Origin: Dicyema japonicum
Lineage: Eukaryota > Animalia > Dicyemida
DNA length: 64,000 bases
Assembly: GCA_011109175.1 (NCBI GenBank)
Contig: RDEW01000009.1
Coordinates: 1,167,652 to 1,231,651 of the forward strand
Direction of reading: 5' to 3'
Made by a program: the position numbers and the translations under genes. The notes beneath the pieces are model-generated. The model saw only the letters and a program-made list of their open reading frames with translations. It was not told where the DNA came from and did not search any database. Below are positions 16,331 through 64,000 of this stretch, in pieces (position 1 is the first letter of the stretch; every line of letters starts with the position of its first letter).

Positions 16331-16554
16331 TTATAAATATTCATAGTATTCTGGTCTTGTCTCATAATCTACTTAAGGAGAGATTTAATCCCGCATATTT
16401 TCATATATTGAAAATTCAATACTAGGGAGATCAAACAGACCATATAATGTAGACTATAAAGATCAGTCCATCTATTGAACCAGGTTTCATGCCAGTAGTT
16501 ATAATAACCACACAAACAACCAAATAAACCAATGATAATTTAAAAAGCTCAATA

Positions 16555-18017
16555 TTATTGATGAACAGATAGCTTTATAGCTGACTGAGACTTCTTCCGA
16601 TCCTTCTCCTTCTTTAATTTGAACCTACAAATCCCCCAAACCACATACGAAGAGAATGATGGATACTGTTTAATCATTGCAGCCATCTCATTCTCAAAAT
16701 CAGTCTTCAAACCCTCCAATTTTTGTCTTCTATTCGCATTCTCTTTTTGGTAAACTTGAATTTTGACTTCATACTGAAAATATAACCCCCAGTCCAACCG
16801 CATTCTGGCTTCCCTCTAACAGGGCCTTCTTCTGGGAGATCTTTGACCGGAATAACTCGTCCATCTTCTGCTCAGCCTCCCGTATTTTTTCTTCCATGGA
16901 AATTCGCTCATTCTCCAACAAACTGATGGGGTTACTTAATGCTCCCGAGTCCTGTTTATAGCCTATCCTCGAGGTCCTGTACCTCTTATAGGTCACAGAA
17001 TCTGTATAATGGATCAGCTCAGGTAGACCCACACTACAATTCACTCAATCACTACCACAACAGCAAATACCGCAAAGCATGCAGATCAGAGTGCTTTAGA
17101 TTGTCAACTAAATGTTACTTCAAACTACTCACTTTCAACTACCCCCCAATCGTAACTCCTTCCACGAATACTCCGGTCCTCCATCTTGCAAATTTCTTCA
17201 CTAGCCACCACAGCGAAGGGTACCCTTTTCTGAGGATAAAGACTAAACTTACAGCCATGTCCTCAGTCATCAAACTTGCCTTATCACTGGCGTGCATATC
17301 CAGGGAGCGGAAGTCGAAAATCTGAATCGTCTCAGTCAAGAATTGGTCCATAAGGTCGGCTTTGAGTGACCGGATTTCCTCAGAGGTGAAGCAGTCACCC
17401 TTCGTAATCACGGGGACTATTGCCACGTGCTCCATAATCGTCTTCAATGTGCAGAGGTCGATTTGTCGGAGTTTTGAGCGGATCAGATACAGACAACAGT
17501 GGATCCGACAGTCGTCAAGAACACATGGTCGGTTCAGTGCGCTCTCAGCATTGAAATACTCTTCAAATCGGTCGGTTATGCATTTTTCGATGATGGACCA
17601 ACTAAGAATCCATAGAAAAAACAAAAAACCAGTCTGAGTTGTCTATGAGGTTACCGAAGTCACGGACACGGAAAATACGGAGATGGAGTTTCACGTCGTT
17701 CTCAGTAAGGACGACCTCGGTGACGTTAATCTATGGAAATAACATATGAATGGGGGACTGATATTTTCTTAGCGTTTGGAAGATCGTGAGTTTGCTTTTG
17801 CATGATTTTGGCGTTAAAGAGAGAGTTGATTAATGTGGTACAACCAATGCCCGATTCACCTGGAATTATTGTGAGAGATACCGACTACAAGGATGTTGAA
17901 CTGGATACCCTTCTCAGTTATCTTCTTATGTAACTGATTTGGAAGATTTCCGAATCCAATGTAACTTTTTTGACACCCGGTAGGACAGGAATCACCTCCA
18001 TTCTCTTTGTTCTTCAT
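16555..18017 (-). CDS. Septin (SEPT7-like) with degenerate G1/G3 motifs, multi-exon
   Basis: YIGFGNLPNQ, GESGIGCTTLINSLF, RIHCCLY, VPVITKGD, RGRSYDWGVVEIDN and a C-terminal coiled coil; in frame after removing 22-28 nt introns. Confidence 0.92.
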
Positions 18018-18221
18018 AAAAGGTTCGTTTGTATTATCTTCAAATGGTTTTACCCTTTAAAATTATGATGATGTTTTATTTTAACAACAATAATAATACA
18101 CACATAGCAAACAAACAAACGCGGTTACAGAGAATATTTTATTGTTAATTTAAAATGATGTTTTAATTAAAAATTTACTTTATTTAATTAACAAAAAATT
18201 AATATTTTAACAATTTATTTA

Positions 18222-18539: not shown

Positions 18540-20790
18540 CTTTCATTAATGAACAGATCATTGACCTGATTTTACTTCAAGAAAGCTGACTTCCTCCATC
18601 ATTATTTCTTTTCGTCTATCCGCCTTTTTCAGTATCCATGATTTTGCGCCGTATAGAAAAACCTGGAACACGATAGCATTAACCAGTCTGCATTTGGTCT
18701 TTAAGCAAATATCTTTGCTTTCCCAAATTCTATTCATTCTCTGGAAGGTGTCTCGTCCCATGGCAATTCGCCTCTTGATTTCCAAGCCTCCGTCACCATT
18801 CCGATTAATTAGACATCCCAGAAAGACAACATTATTGCAACTCTCTATTTTGTCATTCCCAATTTTTAGTTCCATTATTCCATTATTAGCAGTAGTCATA
18901 ATTTTGGTCTTCTTGATATTTAGCAATAAACCAAAGACGGCGCTCTCTTCTCTGAATCTAGAATCAACTCCCTGAGGCCATCCTCTGTTTTAGCCAGTAA
19001 GGTTGTATCGTCAGCATAGCGCAAATTATTGATGTTCCTGCTCCCAATTTTAATTCCGTTATTTGATGCAGTATCTAATTTAGTCATTATCATTTTTGCA
19101 TAAATATTGAATATGATGGGAGATAATAAGCATAAATATTGAATAGGATGGAGATTTTCTACTTACGTGGCCAAATACCAGTTTCCCAAATTTTTTGACA
19201 TAGACTGGTGATAGCTGTCACCGGTATAGCCTTCAACAATTCGCTTGAGATGTTGTCAATCCCCCGTGCCTTGTTCCCCGTTAATTGCCGTGTAGCCCAC
19301 ACAGCATTCATCCTCAAGGATTTTATGCCCCTCACCCAACGTTGCTTCATCAACACATATGGGTGGGCACACAGTTTCTGAATATAGCCGTTCCGTATAT
19401 TCTCTCCAACGATTTCGGATATTCTGTTGGCTTAGCAATTCTACACCATCCTTGTCCTTGATTTTGCCCATCATTTTCGTAAAGGGGGTTCGTAATCTTT
19501 TTAGTTGTTAATACGCATTCCTAGTGTGACCTCTCCTAAAGTCATGTTCCATTTTTTGCAGTGTAACCTCCAGTAGTCTTCTTTATTCTTCCTGGCTGCC
19601 TTTTTGAATTCAGAGTTAAGTTTTCTTATCTCGTCTATATTCCCAGAGACTTTAGCAGCTTTACGAGCCTCAGCAATGTTTAGGGTGTTGGTAGAGAGCC
19701 ACTCAGAGCACTTGGCCGGCGTTTTGTATTTGACATGTTTTATTGCAGCGTTCCTGATAACCAACTGCATATCATTCCATAATTCATCAGGCATCCTTCC
19801 GTTCAAATCCAGTAATCCAATATTGTGCTTAACTTCCATTGCGTATTCTGGTGGTATGTTTGAGACATCGAATTTCTTTACTCGGGGGTATTCCAAGTGT
19901 TACTGAATTTCGTCCTAATTTTTGCAACAAGTAGCTGATGATCTGTTCCACAGTCTGCCCCTGGATATGTTTTGACGGCTGTTATAGAGCTTTTCCAGCG
20001 TTTGGCGCACAAAATATAATCAATCTGGTTCCTAGACATTCCATTTGGCGACGTCCAAGTGTATAATCGTCGTTTGTGCTGTTTGAACCATGTGTTAGTT
20101 ATCTGAAATCCATTTTCCTGACAGAATTGGACCAGTCGATCCCCAGCATCATTTCTTTTCCCCAAACCAAAACTTCCCACAATATCCGTATGTGGCATAC
20201 ACCCAACTTTTGAATTGAAATCCCCCATTATGTAGGTTATGTCCTTTTTGGGTATTAGTTTTAGTGCCTCTTGAAATTCATAATAAAATTGGTCAATTTC
20301 GTCATCCTTGGCAATAGATGTTGGGGCATACACTTGCATGACCGTAATATTCAATGGTCGTCCACGGACGTGGATTAGTATTATCCGATCATTAAATATT
20401 CTATGACTTTCAATAGCACGTGCAATTTTCTTTGAAGCAATGAAGGCCACTCCGTTTCTCTTCGCATTAATGTTACCAGAATAATATATGACGAAATCAT
20501 CAGAACGAAAAAAACCATTGTCAATCCAATGAAGTTCGCTTACTCCAAGCAGGTCAATACCAAGCCTTCTCATTTCTCTTTTACGACTTCTAGTTTCCTT
20601 TCGTTTAAGCCTCTTACGTTCCATGTTGCGAAATTGTGAGATTCTGTGTGACGAAGACTCGAGATTTGATGTTTTGCAGTAACGTTGCTTCCAAATAGAT
20701 CGTAGGAGAGTTTGTTCATAAGATTTTCTTGGCATTTAAATACAGGGTAGGTAGCCAGGTCTTTCCCCATCAACAGCTCTTATATTGGAA
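18540..20790 (-). mobile_element. RTE-clade LINE (BovB-like), frameshifted, with the central RT deleted
   Basis: APE domain (QVYAPT, GDFNSKVG, YTWTSPNG...NQIDYIL, DCGTDH); RT N-terminus GNKARGIDNISSELLK; NNLRYADD at about 19010-19030; C-terminal LVNAIVFQVFLYG. Confidence 0.9.
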
Positions 20791-24290: not shown

Positions 24291-24375
24291 AGCCGGGTGG
24301 CATAGTGGTTAGGTGTCGGGCTTAAGTGGTTTGCTTTTGCATGATTTTGGCGTTAAAGAGAGAGTTGATTAATGT
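24291..24375 (+). other. Truncated tRNA-SINE head fused to a 47-bp perfect copy of septin coding sequence
   Basis: 24296-24328 matches the SINE heads at 13608 and 34005; 24329-24375 is identical to 17790-17836. Confidence 0.85.
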
Positions 24376-30106: not shown

Positions 30107-32870
30107 AGCGTGGCGTCATGTGACTCACCGGATGCAACAACTCTGGAGCATGCTCCTAAAGCATTTCCAAAAAGAGCCATTAGCTCTCTTCCACCGGGGG
30201 CACATGTCGCCGATCGACGGATTACTGGTCTGGCTACAGCTTCTCGGATTTGCAACCTACAAAACTCAAAGGACCGGATATCCATTATACAACTGAATGT
30301 GAACGGAATAAAAGGCAAAATTATTGAACTTAGAACTCTGATTGTTAAACTTAAAGCTGACATCGTGTTCATCCAAGAATCGAAGCTATCAGCAAAAGAT
30401 ACTACGCCCCTCATTCCCGGATACAACATAATACGTGATTGCACTAAGAAACGTAGAAGAGGACTGCTTACATTAATCAGAAAAGGCTTAAAGTTTGAGG
30501 ACCATACACTCGAAGTGAATAAACTCTTGGGAAGTGATGAAACCACGGAGACAATCGGAGTATCTGTTGGCACAACAAAAGGAAGACTATATTTTATAAA
30601 CATGTATATTCCGTCTCCGGGCTCATGTCCGAAACATTACACTATGCCGGACTTATCAGCACTGGAGATTTGGAACGAAGTCATGATATGCGGCGATTTG
30701 AATGCTGAACACCCTCTCTGACTCTTAAATCAGTTTGCAGATATAAGAGGAAATTTGCTGTTGACACAGTCTGGCAATCTGACTATCATCAATTACCAAT
30801 CAAAAAGCACAAGAACACCTCAAAAGAACTCTGACAATCCAACCTCCCCAGATATCACACTCTGTTCACCACAGCTTTCAACAACGATTAATTGGTCCGT
30901 CATCTACGACACCCGAAGTGATCATAACCCTATTCTGCTAAAAATCAAAAGCGAAATTACCAGTGGAAAAAGAAACCTGCATATACAATCTTGCAAATTG
31001 GCAATTATTCCGATCAGTTACGGACCAACATTTGGCTAATATACAGCTGGAAAACTTTACCTCCCTTGATATAGTGGTGCCTACGTCAACAAAGTCATCC
31101 TGGAAGCAAGACAATGGCTGTTCCTAAAAGATATGTCGTTTACACGAGAGAGGAAGGAAGGCTCTGGTCAAGGAACGAAACCGTTTCAAAAAAGTAGGGA
31201 TCCGTTCCTCCGAAGTAAGGATCCGTATATAAGTGCTGAACGAGGAAATAAAAGCCAATGAATTCAAAATTCAAATAGCTAAATGGAAGATGGTCCTTAC
31301 GTCATTAAATCGTAACCGGTTAAAATCCGAAGTCTGGAAGACTATTCGAAATATCTCGAAGGTGGATGAGAGGACACCCGGAAATGACGAATTCAGCCAA
31401 AAGGACCTAAACGCCCTAAAATAAATCGAAAATCTCTCACAAAAACTACATGAGGACTGACCCACCCAAACCGCCGCTAAGAAAACCTAAAATGGATCAA
31501 TTAACTTATTTCACGGAAAAGGAGGTAATGACATCCTTAAGCCAAACAAAAGTAACACATTCTCATGGTCCAGACGGAAATCCCATAATTCTCATGAAAA
31601 TCCTAGGCAATGAGGAATCGGTACCTGACCAAAATCTACAACTGGTGGATTAATTATAATTCAATCCCAACCATGTAGAAACTTGCAAACATTCGCCCAG
31701 TATTGAAGCCAGGAAAACCGAAAGAAGACCCTGCTTCCTTCAGGCCTATTTCTCTCTTATGCTCCATGTCAAAAATTCTGGAAAAGCTTATCCTCGCAAA
31801 AATCTCTGAAAGGACTCCGATAAACCATTCCAGCATGGTTTCAAAAAGGATCGGTCCACAACGAGCTTCCTCACATCCCTGACAAACTTTATTCGCTCTG
31901 GATTTCTGTGCAAGCCAAGACACCAGAATACTGTGTTATACTCACTCCACAAAGCGTTCGACTTTGTGCCGAGGAAGAACCCAACATGGAAAATTTACCA
32001 ATCAGATATCCCTGAAAACCTCAAACGCTGGCTGATGAACATCCTTAGCGACGAAGAGGTAGAGTGTGCATTGGAAACATTCATTCTGTCTCCCGTTTAT
32101 TCCCAAATGGAGTACCCAGGGCTCGCCTCTATCACCATTACTATTCAACTGTTTACGCTGACATTCCGACGCCGAATGGAGAAGACGACTTGCTTCTGGT
32201 TTATGCAGACGATATCGTCTTAGCCTCACGGGATCAGAACACCCAAACAGCGACGGAAAAAATACAACAGCACATAGATCGACTACTCGAGTGGTTTAAT
32301 GAAAATCGGATGTCAATCAATACCGAAAAATCTGTTACAACTCTCTATACCTCGGACGAAAGATTGTCGAACTGGACAGTAGAAGTTACTGTGGAGGGAA
32401 GAGAATTGCCGTTCAGCAAATTGCAAAAAATATTAGGTCTGACTTTCAATACGCACATGAACTTTTCGAAACACGTCACTAACGTGCTGAACAAATGTGA
32501 GAAGAAAATCAACCTTTTGAAATGCCTAACAAGTCTATGGAAAATAGGACATCACCTATACTTAAAACGCTCTACTCACAGTAAATCGAACCATGCATTT
32601 CATATGCGTTTACTTTATGGGGACCACTGGCCTATTATACGAACATCCAGAAAATCTCCGCAACCCAGAAAAGTGCCTTCAAACAAACGGAGAGATAGTA
32701 CACAGGGAGAACATTGAATCACCGACGCCCATGGAGAAACTAATAAAAAAAACAAAAAGGACACCAATGCCAAAAAGAAAGTGCTCGTCCGCAACGAACT
32801 TGTGTAGGCTCAAGGATCAACACCGAAAAGATGAGAGCCTTGATCCAAATCGTCGGGATCACTTAGTTTA
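30107..32870 (+). mobile_element. Near full-length single-ORF APE+RT LINE (Ingi/Vingi-like), frameshifted
   Basis: IIQLNVNG, IQESKL, CGDLNAEH, PDITL, SDHNP; RT motifs RPISLL, QHGF, KAFD, VPxG, YADD; terminus ...IVGIT*; about 2.76 kb; no RNase H seen. Confidence 0.88.
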
Positions 32871-61599: not shown

Positions 61600-64000
61600 A
61601 CGGTGTAGTATAATTTTATAGCTTTGTTCATGCCTGTCGTTAGAAAAGCTACTACAAAGAAGAATACTAAAATCAAAAAAAGTAACTCGGAGAGGTCTTA
61701 AAGGAGAATTATATTGAAAACGATAAGACTACCTCTGAGGGGTTTTAAAGAATAGCTGTATTGAAAATGTTAAGGATCTGTCTCTGAAGCCTCCTTTTGA
61801 ATACTCTGGGAATGCTTTTATACAAATCACTGTTATGTCAAATATGGGAGCCATCAAAATCTCCAACTTACTGTACTCGTTCGACCCGACAGGGTCTATC
61901 AGATTGAGTCACAAAGGCTCCGGCATCTTCCGCCTCGAATTCATGAAGGAGGAGGACAAAAGGAACTTTTGTGAACATGTGAATGCCACTTCACCTTTTG
62001 GTCTTGGAAACCATTGTTTCAGTGAAATCCGAGTGAAACCGTCCGAAATTGTGTTGAAGAACTTGCCATTTTGGGTTGATGATAACGACCTTCATGAATT
62101 TGTCAAGGAAATAGCTTCCTCTACTACAAGCATATGTCGTTTCTACAAGGGAGAAAGACTCCCTCTTGCAAAAGTTCTAGTTGGATCAAGGGCGGAGGCT
62201 ACATCGCTGGTCCGTCTTGGTTTCAACATTGCCACGTGCCGATTACATGTGAATGGTACAGGAGAGGCTCACCTAGGTGTTTCAAGTGCCAACGCTATAG
62301 ACACATATCCTCCTTCTGTAAGGAGAAGACAAAATGTCTCCATTGTGCAGGGGAACACGACCTGACTGCTTGTGGAGAGACTCCTGCGAACACAATGAAT
62401 TGCATAAATTGTGGCTCGTCCTCACATTGTGCCAGATATGGTGGATGCCCAGCCGCCAAGAAATCTGATCAGAGGAAGCAACTAAAAGCGATGGACAGGC
62501 GATAATAGGCGATATTGGGAGAACGTGGACAGCAAAGACAGTTACGTCAAAGTCGGCACCTAAAATTCGTCGAAAACTGAACGATGTCCCACCCAATCTA
62601 TCAGAGAAGATATACACTGAAATATCGGAGATTATGTCACGGCTAAACTATCTGTGCTCGATTGCACATGTGGATTTAATGGAAACGGTGACTTTGGCTT
62701 TGAAGAAGCAAGGTCACCCAAATGTTTGAAGCAAGGACTAAAAATAGTGCTATTGAATGCCCGATCTCTATGGAAAAGGCATAATGAACTAGCACTACTT
62801 GCAAGGGCCTCCAAGATCGACATCTTGGTGGTCAATGAGACGATATTAAAGAAAGCGAAGAGTAATATAATGACTGGATACAATTCTGTGGACGTTTTAT
62901 GGAAGGCTGGAGCAGTTGCTGTTACGAGCAACGTCTATTTTCAACCGGGACTGCCTCCGAATTCGTAATCCAATAGTCGTTTGTGATGTATTGTGTGAAT
63001 TTGTAAACATGGACGTTTGTTGCGACGGAGTATGGATTAGTGTTGGAGGTCTATACTCCAAGAATCTTGAGACTTGTTCTACAGATATCACTGAGTTCTA
63101 CAACAAGAATCCCTATACTATCTTAATTGGGGATCTTAATTCGAAGAACACTAGTTATGGTTGTAGCAAGACAAATCAGGATGGACGACGTTTAGAATTA
63201 TTGTCTGATTCATGTGGCTTTGTGATCCTTACGTCGGATGACCCAAATCATTTTTCTTATCATGGTGGCGACAAACTCGGCGTTTTCCTAGTATCGCCAG
63301 CTCTATCTGTGTATGTGGGAAAGCCAAAAACTCTATGGGATATCGGGAGTGACCATATTCCACAAGAATTAGTTATTACTTTGAGACCAGATGTTATGGA
63401 AGATGTCTTCTTGAAGTTCAACATATCTAACTTGGATTGGGGCCACTATAGGGTCTTCATATCCAATAATTTGTGTGTTCTACCGAGAGAGTTTTCAACC
63501 ATTGAAGGTATCAATGCTGTAAGTAGAGAATTAACAAATCTACTGCAGTCATATCTTCATCTGTATTCACGAAGAGTTTTCTCAAAAAAATCATTATTTT
63601 GTGTCGCCAATTATTATGAGGCTTATTCGGGAGAAGAATCGCCTAAGGGCAAAGCAAAGACGTTGTGCTGACAAAATAGACGGGGAATTCATATCAGCCA
63701 GAATCAGGATGATGAAGGAAGCAATCAGCAATATATGGAAGGAGGAGACTGACCGTATATGGAGGGCTGAGGCTGCAAAAATTGATATGAAGAATCCCTC
63801 TTTTTGGAAATGCTATCAGAAGATAATGTGTCCGAAGTCGGGTGCAGAAAAAATTATACTGGATAAACCAGACGGGGGAGTATGCATAACGGAGGAAACA
63901 CCTTCGATATTCAGGGATCAGCTCCAAAAAATTCAGGGTGTGGATCCGTGGAGTTTGATCCCTGATGACAAAAAGAAGGTGTCTGCCGATATATTTAAAC
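61600..64000 (+). mobile_element. Two-ORF I/Jockey-group LINE (gag-like ORF1 plus APE), runs off the window end
   Basis: Three zinc knuckles (CFKCQRYRHISSFC, CLHCAGEHDLTAC, CINCGSSSH); ORF2 VLLNARSL, VNET, IGDLNSK, GSDH; frameshifts. Confidence 0.88.

What the first reader, a model, noticed from the sequence alone, without database searches (positions are those of the whole stretch)
16555..18017. Septin with abolished GTP-binding motifs but an intact fold: candidate pseudo-GTPase septin
Seen: in the spliced frame the P-loop reads GESGIGCT (codon TGT where the invariant Lys of GxxxxGKS/T should be). G3 reads IFRVRDFGN where septins have IVDTPGFGD, an ungapped alignment with D>R and G>D. The P-x-G-H loop after CCLY is deleted (LYLIRSK--LRQID). 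Flanking septin hallmarks (GFxNLPNQ, TLINSLF, TKGD, RGRxYxWG, coiled coil) and all intron phases are preserved, with no stops. Known: G1 Lys and G3 Asp bind nucleotide/Mg, and nucleotide stabilises the septin G-interface; even the non-hydrolysing SEPT6 group keeps these residues. Inference: this is a selected, nucleotide-independent septin that may cap filaments or build a nucleotide-free interface. The changes are multi-base substitutions, so indel errors cannot explain them.
Basis: partly seen in the sequence, partly recalled or inferred. Interest (0 to 1): 0.78.

Follow-up and report, generated by a model that had tools for sequence, protein, structure and literature searches.

The report
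Animal septin with dismantled GTP pocket
An intact, intron-bearing septin-7-type cytoskeleton gene of a tiny-intron parasite (most likely Dicyema japonicum) has lost nearly every residue that holds the phosphates and magnesium of GTP, so it may be the first animal example of a nucleotide-free septin, a kind so far proposed only for yeast sporulation septins.

Summary
On the minus strand, 18017-16555, eight exons joined by seven 22-28-nt GT-AG introns give a 429-aa septin with no stops.

- **Motifs lost:** G1 reads GESGIGCT (Lys to Cys). G3 DTPG reads RVRD. No switch-I Thr lies at the aligned column. Three residues of trans-loop 1, including its His, are missing.
- **Motifs kept:** G4 (TKGD), RGRxYxWG, and 32 of 40 columns that are at least 90% conserved.
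- **Where the damage lies:** radical changes cluster in the nucleotide pocket (7/15 against 8/84 columns).
- **Sequence support:** DNA contigs confirm every motif codon. Coding variants are 6 synonymous to 2 non-synonymous.
- **Ancestry:** all seven introns sit at ancestral septin positions, one of them seen only in the two septin-7 genes. It is therefore a septin-7-type gene by descent, not a retrocopy.
- **New point:** the trans-loop deletion abuts a lost ancestral intron, which suggests imprecise intron loss.

A selected pseudo-GTPase is likely, but loss of binding, expression and paralogue content are untested. The concept is not new: class I septin pseudoGTPases (S. pombe Spn7) were proposed in 2023. 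I found none reported for animals or for the septin-7 position.

The parts
17882..18017 (-). Exon 1: ATG at 18017, short N-terminus, GFGNLPNQ, basic stretch HKKITEKG, first base of the G46 codon
   Evidence: aligns with septin N-termini
17860..17881 (-). Intron 1, 22 nt GT..AG, phase 1, inside the first P-loop Gly codon
   Evidence: same column and phase in seal SEPT2-group, acanthocephalan and Clonorchis septin genes
17759..17859 (-). Exon 2: degenerate G1 GESGIGCT (Cys52 codon TGT at 17842-17840), TLINSLF, switch-I region (K77 at the catalytic-Thr column, 17767-17765)
   Evidence: Pfam Septin positions 12-41; no read differences
17731..17758 (-). Intron 2, 28 nt, phase 0
   Evidence: position shared only with Trichuris septin-7
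17630..17730 (-). Exon 3: degenerate G3, R100-V-R-D103 (17670-17659) in place of DTPG
17602..17629 (-). Intron 3, 28 nt, phase 2
   Evidence: shared with all five compared septin genes
17253..17601 (-). Exon 4: CCLYLIRS-KLRQID with the 3-residue trans-loop-1 deletion (site 17477-17472), where an ancestral phase-2 intron is missing; intact G4 TKGD (17405-17394); alpha-4 Glu kept
   Evidence: Pfam Septin E=3.4e-26; PDB alignments
17230..17252 (-). Intron 4, 23 nt, phase 0
   Evidence: shared with seal, Trichuris and Clonorchis genes
17133..17229 (-). Exon 5: septin unique element beta-meander RGRSYDWG (17166-17143); Asp instead of Pro at -1 of WG
   Evidence: Pfam Septin E=1.5e-8
17108..17132 (-). 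Intron 5, 25 nt, phase 1
   Evidence: shared only with the two septin-7 genes, Trichuris and Anopheles
17056..17107 (-). Exon 6 (alpha-5/alpha-6 region, DLHALRYLLL)
17034..17055 (-). Intron 6, 22 nt, phase 2
   Evidence: shared with Trichuris, acanthocephalan and Clonorchis genes
16799..17033 (-). Exon 7: end of the G domain and start of the long charged C-terminal extension
   Evidence: aligns with the septin-7 C-terminal extension
16774..16798 (-). Intron 7, 25 nt, phase 0
   Evidence: shared with acanthocephalan and Clonorchis genes, but the alignment here is less certain
16555..16773 (-). Exon 8: rest of the C-terminal extension and basic tail; stop TAA at 16557-16555
16625..16648 (-). Probable eighth micro-intron, 24 nt, GTATGT..TGTAG, in frame (the protein would be 421 aa if it is removed)
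   Evidence: sequence only; not tested with RNA

Best explanation
This is the septin-7-type (Momany group 2b-7) septin gene of a micro-intron animal, most likely Dicyema japonicum. It has evolved into a pseudo-GTPase of the class that binds neither GTP nor GDP in the canonical way.

What the sequence shows:
- The P-loop Lys is Cys.
- All four residues of the G3 DxxG motif are replaced by R-V-R-D.
- No switch-I catalytic Thr lies at the aligned column.
- Trans-loop 1 is shortened by three residues. Its His normally reaches the partner subunit's nucleotide across the G interface.
- The fold, the beta-meander G-interface residues (Arg-Gly-Arg, Tyr, Trp-Gly), the G4 Lys and Asp, the alpha-4 Glu, the N-terminal basic stretch and a long C-terminal extension are all kept.

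What I infer:
- The protein still joins septin hetero-oligomers through its NC interface and C-terminal extension.
- It forms a G interface that needs no nucleotide. The most economical case is a G homodimer at the centre of a hexamer. Neither pocket would then hold a nucleotide, so the partner-contacting His would have nothing to contact.
- The trans-loop deletion most likely arose when an ancestral intron at exactly that spot was removed imprecisely.
For: - Gene model and intact ORF.
- Septin homology: Pfam on exon pieces. PDB septins score about 1e-15 on exon 4. The full spliced protein scores 1e-74 against septin-7 representatives.
- Septin-7 type: the SEPT7-clade HMM scores 323 bits, against 259 for SEPT2, 259 for clade C and 240 for SEPT9/Cdc10. 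Intron 5 is shared only with the two septin-7 genes and intron 2 only with Trichuris septin-7. The C-terminal extension is long, as in septin-7.
- Motif loss is unusual even for divergent septins: of 76 full-length representatives, only P0131 and the probably mis-modelled P0092 lack the P-loop Lys, and nearly all other long-branch rows keep it.
- Selective pattern: 32 of 40 columns that are at least 90% conserved are kept. Radical changes hit 7 of 15 pocket columns against 8 of 84 others, Fisher p=0.0014, though I chose the pocket set post hoc. Three of those 8 'other' changes also flank G3, trans-loop 1 or the WG motif.
- Constraint now: the 8 coding variants in reads are all transitions, 6 synonymous and 2 conservative (I>V, H>R), P=0.02 under neutrality.
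- Not a retrocopy: all 7 introns lie at ancestral positions and phases.
- Origin of the deletion: an ancestral phase-2 intron sits in the Gly codon right after the trans-loop-1 His in four other animal septin genes. It is absent in this gene exactly where the 3 residues are missing.
- Literature: class I septin pseudoGTPases and co-variation of trans-loop 1 and WG -1 residues with partner pocket occupancy (PMC10731463). Position of group 2b-7 in hexamers and octamers, and a listed S. mansoni septin set without a SEPT3/9-type member (PMC8801916).
Against: - No RNA evidence. No listed run was on record as RNA and no spliced contig was laid.
- No orthologue or paralogue was reachable: the word search was blank, and the best hit in 1.84 billion representatives is 34-48% identical on exon 4. 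So there is no dN/dS, and I cannot say whether a canonical septin-7 paralogue exists.
- The ML tree does not resolve the subgroup. The end branch is 3.2-4.4 substitutions per site. The AU test rejects neither a SEPT7 grouping (p=0.63) nor a SEPT2 grouping (p=0.65).
- G4 xKxD and the P-loop glycines are intact, and three new Arg residues sit in the G3 region. Some non-canonical guanine-ligand binding therefore cannot be excluded.
- The genome as a whole evolves fast (PMC6543705), and earlier unchecked notes list several other degenerate active sites. Part of the pattern may be lineage-wide relaxation.
- The polymorphism test rests on 8 partly linked sites from one sample.
Confidence: 0.62

Rival explanations
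1. It is still a nucleotide- or nucleoside-binding septin with a rebuilt pocket. The intact G4 (Lys180, Asp182) recognises guanine. The new arginines (R97, R100, R102) replace the P-loop Lys and Mg2+ in neutralising phosphates. Alternatively it binds an unphosphorylated or monophosphorylated ligand, as docking suggested for Spn7.
For: G4 TKGD, the P-loop glycines and the Thr after Cys52 are kept. G3 gains three Arg. For Spn7, GMP and guanosine docked best (PMC10731463).
Against: Loss of the P-loop Lys together with all of DxxG and the aligned switch-I Thr removes every canonical phosphate and Mg contact. [quoted passage not shown] Deletion of trans-loop 1 fits an interface without nucleotides.
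Confidence: 0.22
2. It is a recently inactivated or unexpressed relic, a young pseudogene whose frame has not yet been hit.
For: No RNA evidence was obtained. The branch is very long. A LINE fragment lies directly upstream.
Against: There is no stop or frameshift in 1290 nt, and all 7 micro-introns keep GT..AG and their phase. The motif changes need many multi-base substitutions plus an in-frame 9-nt deletion, yet 80% of near-invariant columns survive. Polymorphism is 6 synonymous to 2 non-synonymous. Radical changes are focused on the pocket rather than spread evenly.
Confidence: 0.1
3. It is an extra, divergent paralogue that sits beside a canonical septin-7 and acts as a specialised or stage-specific subunit, for example as a filament end or regulator, in the way Spn7 and Spr28 do in yeast sporulation.
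For: Schistosoma has two septin-7 paralogues (PMC8801916). Known class I candidates are specialised, rapidly evolving paralogues (PMC10731463). This rival is a variant of the best explanation rather than an alternative to it.
Against: No second septin lies in the 64-kb window apart from a 47-nt exon fragment. The reported gene set of D. japonicum is strongly reduced, at 5,012 genes (PMC6736024). The rest of the genome could not be searched.
Confidence: 0.3
4. It is an assembly or sequencing artefact at the motif codons.
For: None found. The window differs from all reads at two synonymous sites, 17075 and 17553.
Against: Contigs of three DNA runs match every motif codon, with no indels anywhere in the gene. 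The changes are multi-base substitutions.
Confidence: 0.01

Closest known systems
Animal septin-7 (SEPT7 / Pnut; Momany group 2b-7)
   Same: The best full-length matches are septin-7 proteins. The SEPT7-clade HMM gives the best score. Intron 5 is seen only in the two septin-7 genes and intron 2 only in Trichuris septin-7. The overall layout matches: short N-terminus with GFxNLPNQ and a basic stretch, G domain, beta-meander RGRxYxWG, and a long C-terminal extension.
   Different: Canonical septin-7 keeps GESGLGKST, the switch-I Thr, DTPG and the trans-loop-1 PxGH, and is an active GTPase found GDP-bound. Here all four elements are replaced or deleted. The ML tree does not resolve SEPT7 against SEPT2.
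Class I septin pseudoGTPases: S. pombe Spn7, and tentatively S. cerevisiae Spr28 (Hussain et al. 2023, PMC10731463)
   Same: Non-conservative substitutions in G1 and G3 that are incompatible with canonical GTP or GDP binding. Rapid evolution. An unusual residue at -1 of the WG motif (Asp here; Gln in Spn7, Glu in Spr28). Altered partner-nucleotide contacts.
   Different: Those proteins are fungal group 3 septins. They are sporulation-specific and sit at the ends of octamers, and Spn7 also has G4 substitutions. This gene is animal and septin-7-type, which is a core position. It keeps G4, and it has deleted its own trans-loop 1. Its origin is clearly independent.
Class II septin pseudoGTPases (human SEPT6 group, S. 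mansoni SEPT10, Strongyloides UNC-61a/b)
   Same: No catalytic switch-I Thr at the aligned position.
   Different: Class II members keep G1, G3 and G4 and stay permanently GTP-bound. This protein has also lost the phosphate- and Mg-binding residues.

Membership tests
Septin family (Pfam PF00735, septin-type G domain) by homology | Significant match to the septin profile across the G domain | tested here: met
   Exon pieces cover profile positions 12-41, 48-79, 82-189 and 200-230; exon 4 scores E=3.4e-26 and exon 5 scores 1.5e-8. The spliced protein scores 1e-100 against a septin-7 clade HMM.
Septin family (functional GTPase definition) | G1 GxxxxGK[S/T] | tested here: not met
   G1 reads GESGIGCT, Lys to Cys. 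That column is Lys in 99% of the representatives.
Septin family (functional GTPase definition) | G3 DxxG | tested here: not met
   R-V-R-D stands in place of D-T-P-G in an ungapped alignment.
Septin family (functional GTPase definition) | G4 xKxD | tested here: met
   G4 reads TKGD, with K180 and D182 kept.
Septin family | Septin unique element with the beta-meander RGRxYPWG | tested here: met
   The motif reads RGRSYDWG; only the -1 Pro is changed, to Asp.
Septin-7 subgroup (group 2b-7) | Closest similarity to septin-7 sequences and profile | tested here: met
   The eight named proteins among the top ten full-length hits are septin-7, septin-7-like or (one) an unnamed acanthocephalan protein. 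The SEPT7 HMM scores 64 bits above SEPT2.
Septin-7 subgroup (group 2b-7) | Monophyly with septin-7 in a tree | tested here: inconclusive
   Placement is an unresolved polytomy with an end branch of 3.2-4.4. The AU test rejects neither SEPT7 (p=0.63) nor SEPT2 (p=0.65).
Septin-7 subgroup (group 2b-7) | Subgroup-specific intron positions | tested here: met
   Intron 5 (phase 1) is shared with Trichuris and Anopheles septin-7 and with none of the three non-septin-7 genes compared. Intron 2 is shared with Trichuris septin-7 only. Only two septin-7 gene structures were compared.
Class I septin pseudoGTPase (Hussain et al. 2023) | [quoted passage not shown] | tested here: met
   K52C, no Thr at the switch-I column (K77), D100R, T101V, P102R and G103D. 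Radical changes hit 7 of 15 pocket columns. G4 is not substituted, unlike in Spn7.
Class I septin pseudoGTPase (Hussain et al. 2023) | Inability to bind GTP or GDP | not testable with these tools
   This needs recombinant protein. I could not even build a model, because the spliced protein has no reference that I could hand to the folding tool.
Pseudogene or processed retrocopy | Stops, frameshifts, broken splice sites or lack of introns | tested here: not met
   No stop or frameshift is present. All 7 introns are GT..AG and lie at ancestral positions.

The most novel reading that the evidence does not exclude
This is the only septin-7-type subunit of a metazoan. It forms the central G interface of the septin protofilament with both pockets empty. 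That would show that a core septin interface can be built and maintained without any nucleotide. The loss of the partner-contacting trans-loop-1 His would then be a by-product of the imprecise deletion of an intron during genome-wide intron shrinkage.
Probability: 0.28. Interest if true: 0.72.

Novelty: new variant of a known kind. Interest (0 to 1): 0.56.

Why it matters
Why septins bind nucleotide, and whether the G interface needs it, is an open question. It is hard to test because nucleotide-free septin complexes are not available (bioRxiv 10.1101/2025.01.29.635471).

The only proposed natural nucleotide-free septins are fungal, sporulation-specific end subunits, and they are still untested biochemically (PMC10731463). 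A septin-7-type core subunit of an animal has independently lost G1 Lys, the aligned switch-I Thr, all of G3 and its trans-loop-1 His, while keeping the rest of the interface.

If it is expressed, it would be a natural experiment for three things: recombinant assembly, structure determination of an empty-pocket G interface, and mapping of compensatory contacts. It also gives a concrete example of coding change caused by imprecise intron loss in a genome whose introns have shrunk to 22-28 nt.

Tried and rejected
- **Word search with exon 4**: blank.
- **Exhaustive representative search with exon 4**: 824 septin hits, but none close. The best is 71.6 bits, with no self hit. No orthologue or paralogue means no dN/dS.
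- **Sequencing runs**: five holders, none on record as RNA. Laying four of them confirmed the DNA but gave no spliced contig.
- **ML trees and AU tests**: the subgroup is not resolved because of the very long branch. Residue columns that discriminate SEPT7 from SEPT2 were also uninformative, 3 against 3.
- **Structure prediction and dimer modelling**: not done. The spliced protein exists only in my scratch files and has no reference, and I did not type it in.
- **Single-register heptad test of the C-terminus**: not significant, P=0.43.
- **Alternative P-loop or G3 exon**: rejected. The introns are 22-28 nt, and tblastn of the protein against the window finds only a 47-nt copy of exon 2, which lacks the G1 codons.
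- **Gene-structure look-ups**: four failed because the exact isoform was not on record.
- **Atlas look-up of P0131**, the only other well-modelled septin representative without a P-loop Lys: no taxon obtained.
- **Paper searches** for an animal class I septin pseudoGTPase: nothing found.
- **Earlier-findings look-ups**: by sequence, blank.

Full report
**1. What is there.**
Reading the minus strand of 16480-18100 and splicing by script gives eight exons: 18017-17882, 17859-17759, 17730-17630, 17601-17253, 17229-17133, 17107-17056, 17033-16799 and 16773-16555. They are joined by seven introns of 22, 28, 28, 23, 25, 22 and 25 nt, all GT..AG. The product is 429 aa with no stop.

A 24-nt in-frame GTATGT..TGTAG stretch at 16648-16625 looks like an eighth micro-intron. 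If it is removed, the protein is 421 aa.

Several features fit Dicyema japonicum:
- Introns of this size.
- Window G+C of 0.33-0.43.
- LINE endonuclease and reverse-transcriptase remnants.
- Published values for that genome: 36.7% GC, 49% repeats, LINE-rich (PMC6736024).

Myxobolid myxozoans are the only other animals known with such introns (PMC13644364). The one GC value I saw for them, Henneguya salminicola at 29%, is lower. Earlier follow-up notes on this genome reached the same identification. I treat it as most likely, not proven.

**2.
Each exon piece matches Pfam Septin. Exon 4 scores E=3.4e-26 and exon 5 scores 1.5e-8. Exon 4 matches solved septins (Cdc3, SEPT7, SEPT3, SEPT9) at about 1e-15.

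I aligned the spliced protein with 76 full-length septin representatives. The motifs read as follows:

| Element | This gene | Usual septin |
|---|---|---|
| G1 | GESGIGCT (Cys52, codon TGT) | GESGLGKS |
| G3 | LRIFRVRDFGN, ungapped | LTIVDTPGFGD |
| Switch-I catalytic Thr column | K77 (S79 lies two residues on) | Thr |
| Loop after CCLY | three residues shorter (RS---K) | APSGHG |
| G4 | TKGD, kept | AKAD |
| Beta-meander | RGRSYDWG, kept | RGRxYPWG |

The trans-loop-1 His is therefore gone. GFGNLPNQ and TLINSLF are also kept.

The codons need multi-base changes from any canonical ancestor. DNA contigs of three runs show no difference and no indel at the motif codons. Those runs come from one sample, probably the one that was assembled, so this is not independent support.

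**3. Is it a living gene?**
- There are no stops or frameshifts, and the seven splice-site pairs are intact.
- Of 40 alignment columns conserved in at least 90% of septins, 32 are kept.
- Radical changes (negative BLOSUM62 score, or deletion) hit 7 of 15 nucleotide-pocket columns but only 8 of 84 other conserved columns. The odds ratio is 8.3 and Fisher p is 0.0014. I chose the pocket set from prior knowledge after seeing the finding, so the p-value is illustrative.
- Three of those 8 'other' changes flank G3, trans-loop 1 or the WG motif.
- The read contigs carry eight variants in the coding sequence. All are transitions: six synonymous, two conservative (I>V, H>R). The probability under neutrality is 0.02.
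- Fast evolution alone does not normally remove these motifs. Nearly all other very long-branch septins in the set keep the P-loop Lys. Only P0131 and the probably mis-modelled P0092 lack it.

These points favour a constrained gene whose pocket, specifically, was released from constraint. Expression is not shown.

**4. Which septin?**
Scored locally, the best full-length matches of the spliced protein are septin-7 proteins from Anopheles, Trichuris, Trichinella and teleosts, up to 243 bits. Clade HMMs give SEPT7 323 bits, SEPT2 259, an unnamed clade 259 and SEPT9/Cdc10 240.

ML trees do not resolve it. The end branch is 3.2-4.4 substitutions per site, against a median of 0.5-0.6. The AU test rejects neither grouping.

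I therefore compared gene structures. I mapped exact exon maps for five animal septin genes: seal SEPT2-group, Trichuris septin-7, an acanthocephalan septin, Clonorchis septin-5 and Anopheles septin-7. The results:
- All seven introns of this gene share alignment column and phase with introns of other septin genes.
- Intron 5 is shared only with the two septin-7 genes.
- Intron 2 is shared only with Trichuris septin-7.

So the gene is ancient, is not a retrocopy, and is best read as septin-7-type. I put that at about 0.75.

**5. A new detail: the origin of the trans-loop deletion.**
Four of the five compared genes have a phase-2 intron in the Gly codon directly after the trans-loop-1 His (..PxGH-G|LKPLD). 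This gene lacks that intron, and lacks the three residues immediately before it.

The simplest reading is imprecise intron loss: one deletion removed the intron plus nine exonic bases. An alternative is use of a cryptic upstream donor, later fixed by intron loss. The chance that a lone deletion abuts one of the few lost intron sites is a few percent by my rough estimate.

**6. How it probably works.**
From established septin structural knowledge, cited by family rather than tested here:
- The P-loop Lys binds the beta and gamma phosphates.
- The G3 Asp and Gly bind Mg2+ and the gamma phosphate.
- The switch-I Thr is catalytic.
- The trans-loop-1 His contacts the partner's nucleotide across the G interface (PMC10731463).

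Losing all of these fits 'class I septin pseudoGTPase', a septin that cannot bind GTP or GDP. That class was proposed for S. pombe Spn7 and tentatively for Spr28, and awaits experiment.

Group 2b-7 septins sit inside the protofilament. In hexamers the two copies are adjacent at the centre (PMC8801916). That they meet through a G interface is established knowledge that I did not test here. The septin set listed for Schistosoma mansoni in that review has no SEPT3/9-type member.

A G homodimer of two empty-pocket subunits would explain why the partner-contacting His became dispensable. It would also explain why the -1 residue of WG is Asp, which parallels Gln in Spn7 and Glu in Spr28. The retained G4 Asp, Arg-Gly-Arg and alpha-4 Glu match the interface hydrogen-bond network described for septins (bioRxiv 10.1101/2025.01.29.635471). 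All of this paragraph is inference.

**7. Rivals.**
- Non-canonical ligand binding, through the intact G4 and three new Arg in G3, cannot be excluded (0.22).
- A young pseudogene is unlikely (0.10).
- Artefact is excluded for practical purposes.
- Whether a canonical septin-7 paralogue exists is unknown. If it does, this would be a specialised extra subunit. That is a variant of the main reading, not a contradiction.

**8. Novelty.**
The concept is published for fungi. In the paper searches I found no animal class I candidate and none in the septin-7 position. Hussain et al. discuss only class II cases in animals.

This gene differs from Spn7 in four ways: subgroup, position in the filament, retention of G4, and deletion of its own trans-loop 1. 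I rate it a new variant of a known kind.

Earlier unchecked notes list other degenerate GTPases and enzymes in this genome. Part of the pattern may therefore be lineage-wide.

**9. Limits.**
There is no RNA evidence, no orthologues or paralogues, and no structure model, because the spliced protein could not be passed by reference. One mammalian (seal) locus was used only to map exon boundaries.

Noticed in passing
window 24329-24375 (compare 17790-17836): A perfect 47-nt copy of part of septin exon 2 (codons for TLINSLFNAKIMQKQ, without the G1 codons) lies 6.5 kb away, in the same orientation, next to a tRNA-like SINE head. Read contigs show both junction contexts, and the 47-mer has about 2-3 times the flanking depth. 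The copy is therefore real, recent and low in copy number.
   Followed up: partly
window 16625-16648: A 24-nt in-frame stretch, GTATGT..TGTAG, inside exon 8 looks like an eighth micro-intron. Its retention or removal would not break the frame.
   Followed up: no
window 17472-17477: The 3-residue trans-loop-1 deletion coincides with a lost ancestral phase-2 intron. This looks like imprecise intron loss in a genome whose introns have shrunk to 22-28 nt.
   Followed up: yes
window 17061-17091 (exon 6): Run X5 (2017, a different study, 12 million letters of contigs) holds 43% of the sampled words of the gene. Yet only four 31-nt records were laid, all inside exon 6, two at depth 250-280 and two at 3-9. 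High depth with so small a contig set would fit RNA rather than genomic DNA. A 0.43 share is nearer to what spliced mRNA would give than to the 0.90-0.95 of the DNA runs. This remains unresolved.
   Followed up: partly
window 17075 and 17553: The window differs from the contigs of every run that covers these two synonymous sites. Runs X2 and X3 carry further variants at 17193/17194. At 16991-17024, minor contigs of X3 (and at two of the sites X2) suggest a second haplotype in the sample.
   Followed up: yes
window 18558-20735, 32064-32717, 62916-63671: LINE remnants (APE endonuclease and reverse-transcriptase ORFs). One lies directly upstream of the septin start codon.
   Followed up: partly
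L001:246-1250 (protein P0131): An intronless 334-aa septin on compact Logan contigs also lacks the P-loop Lys (GRRGHGSS) and DxxG (TTYHG), but keeps AKAD and RGRKYPWG. It is another candidate nucleotide-free septin, from an unidentified organism.
   Followed up: partly
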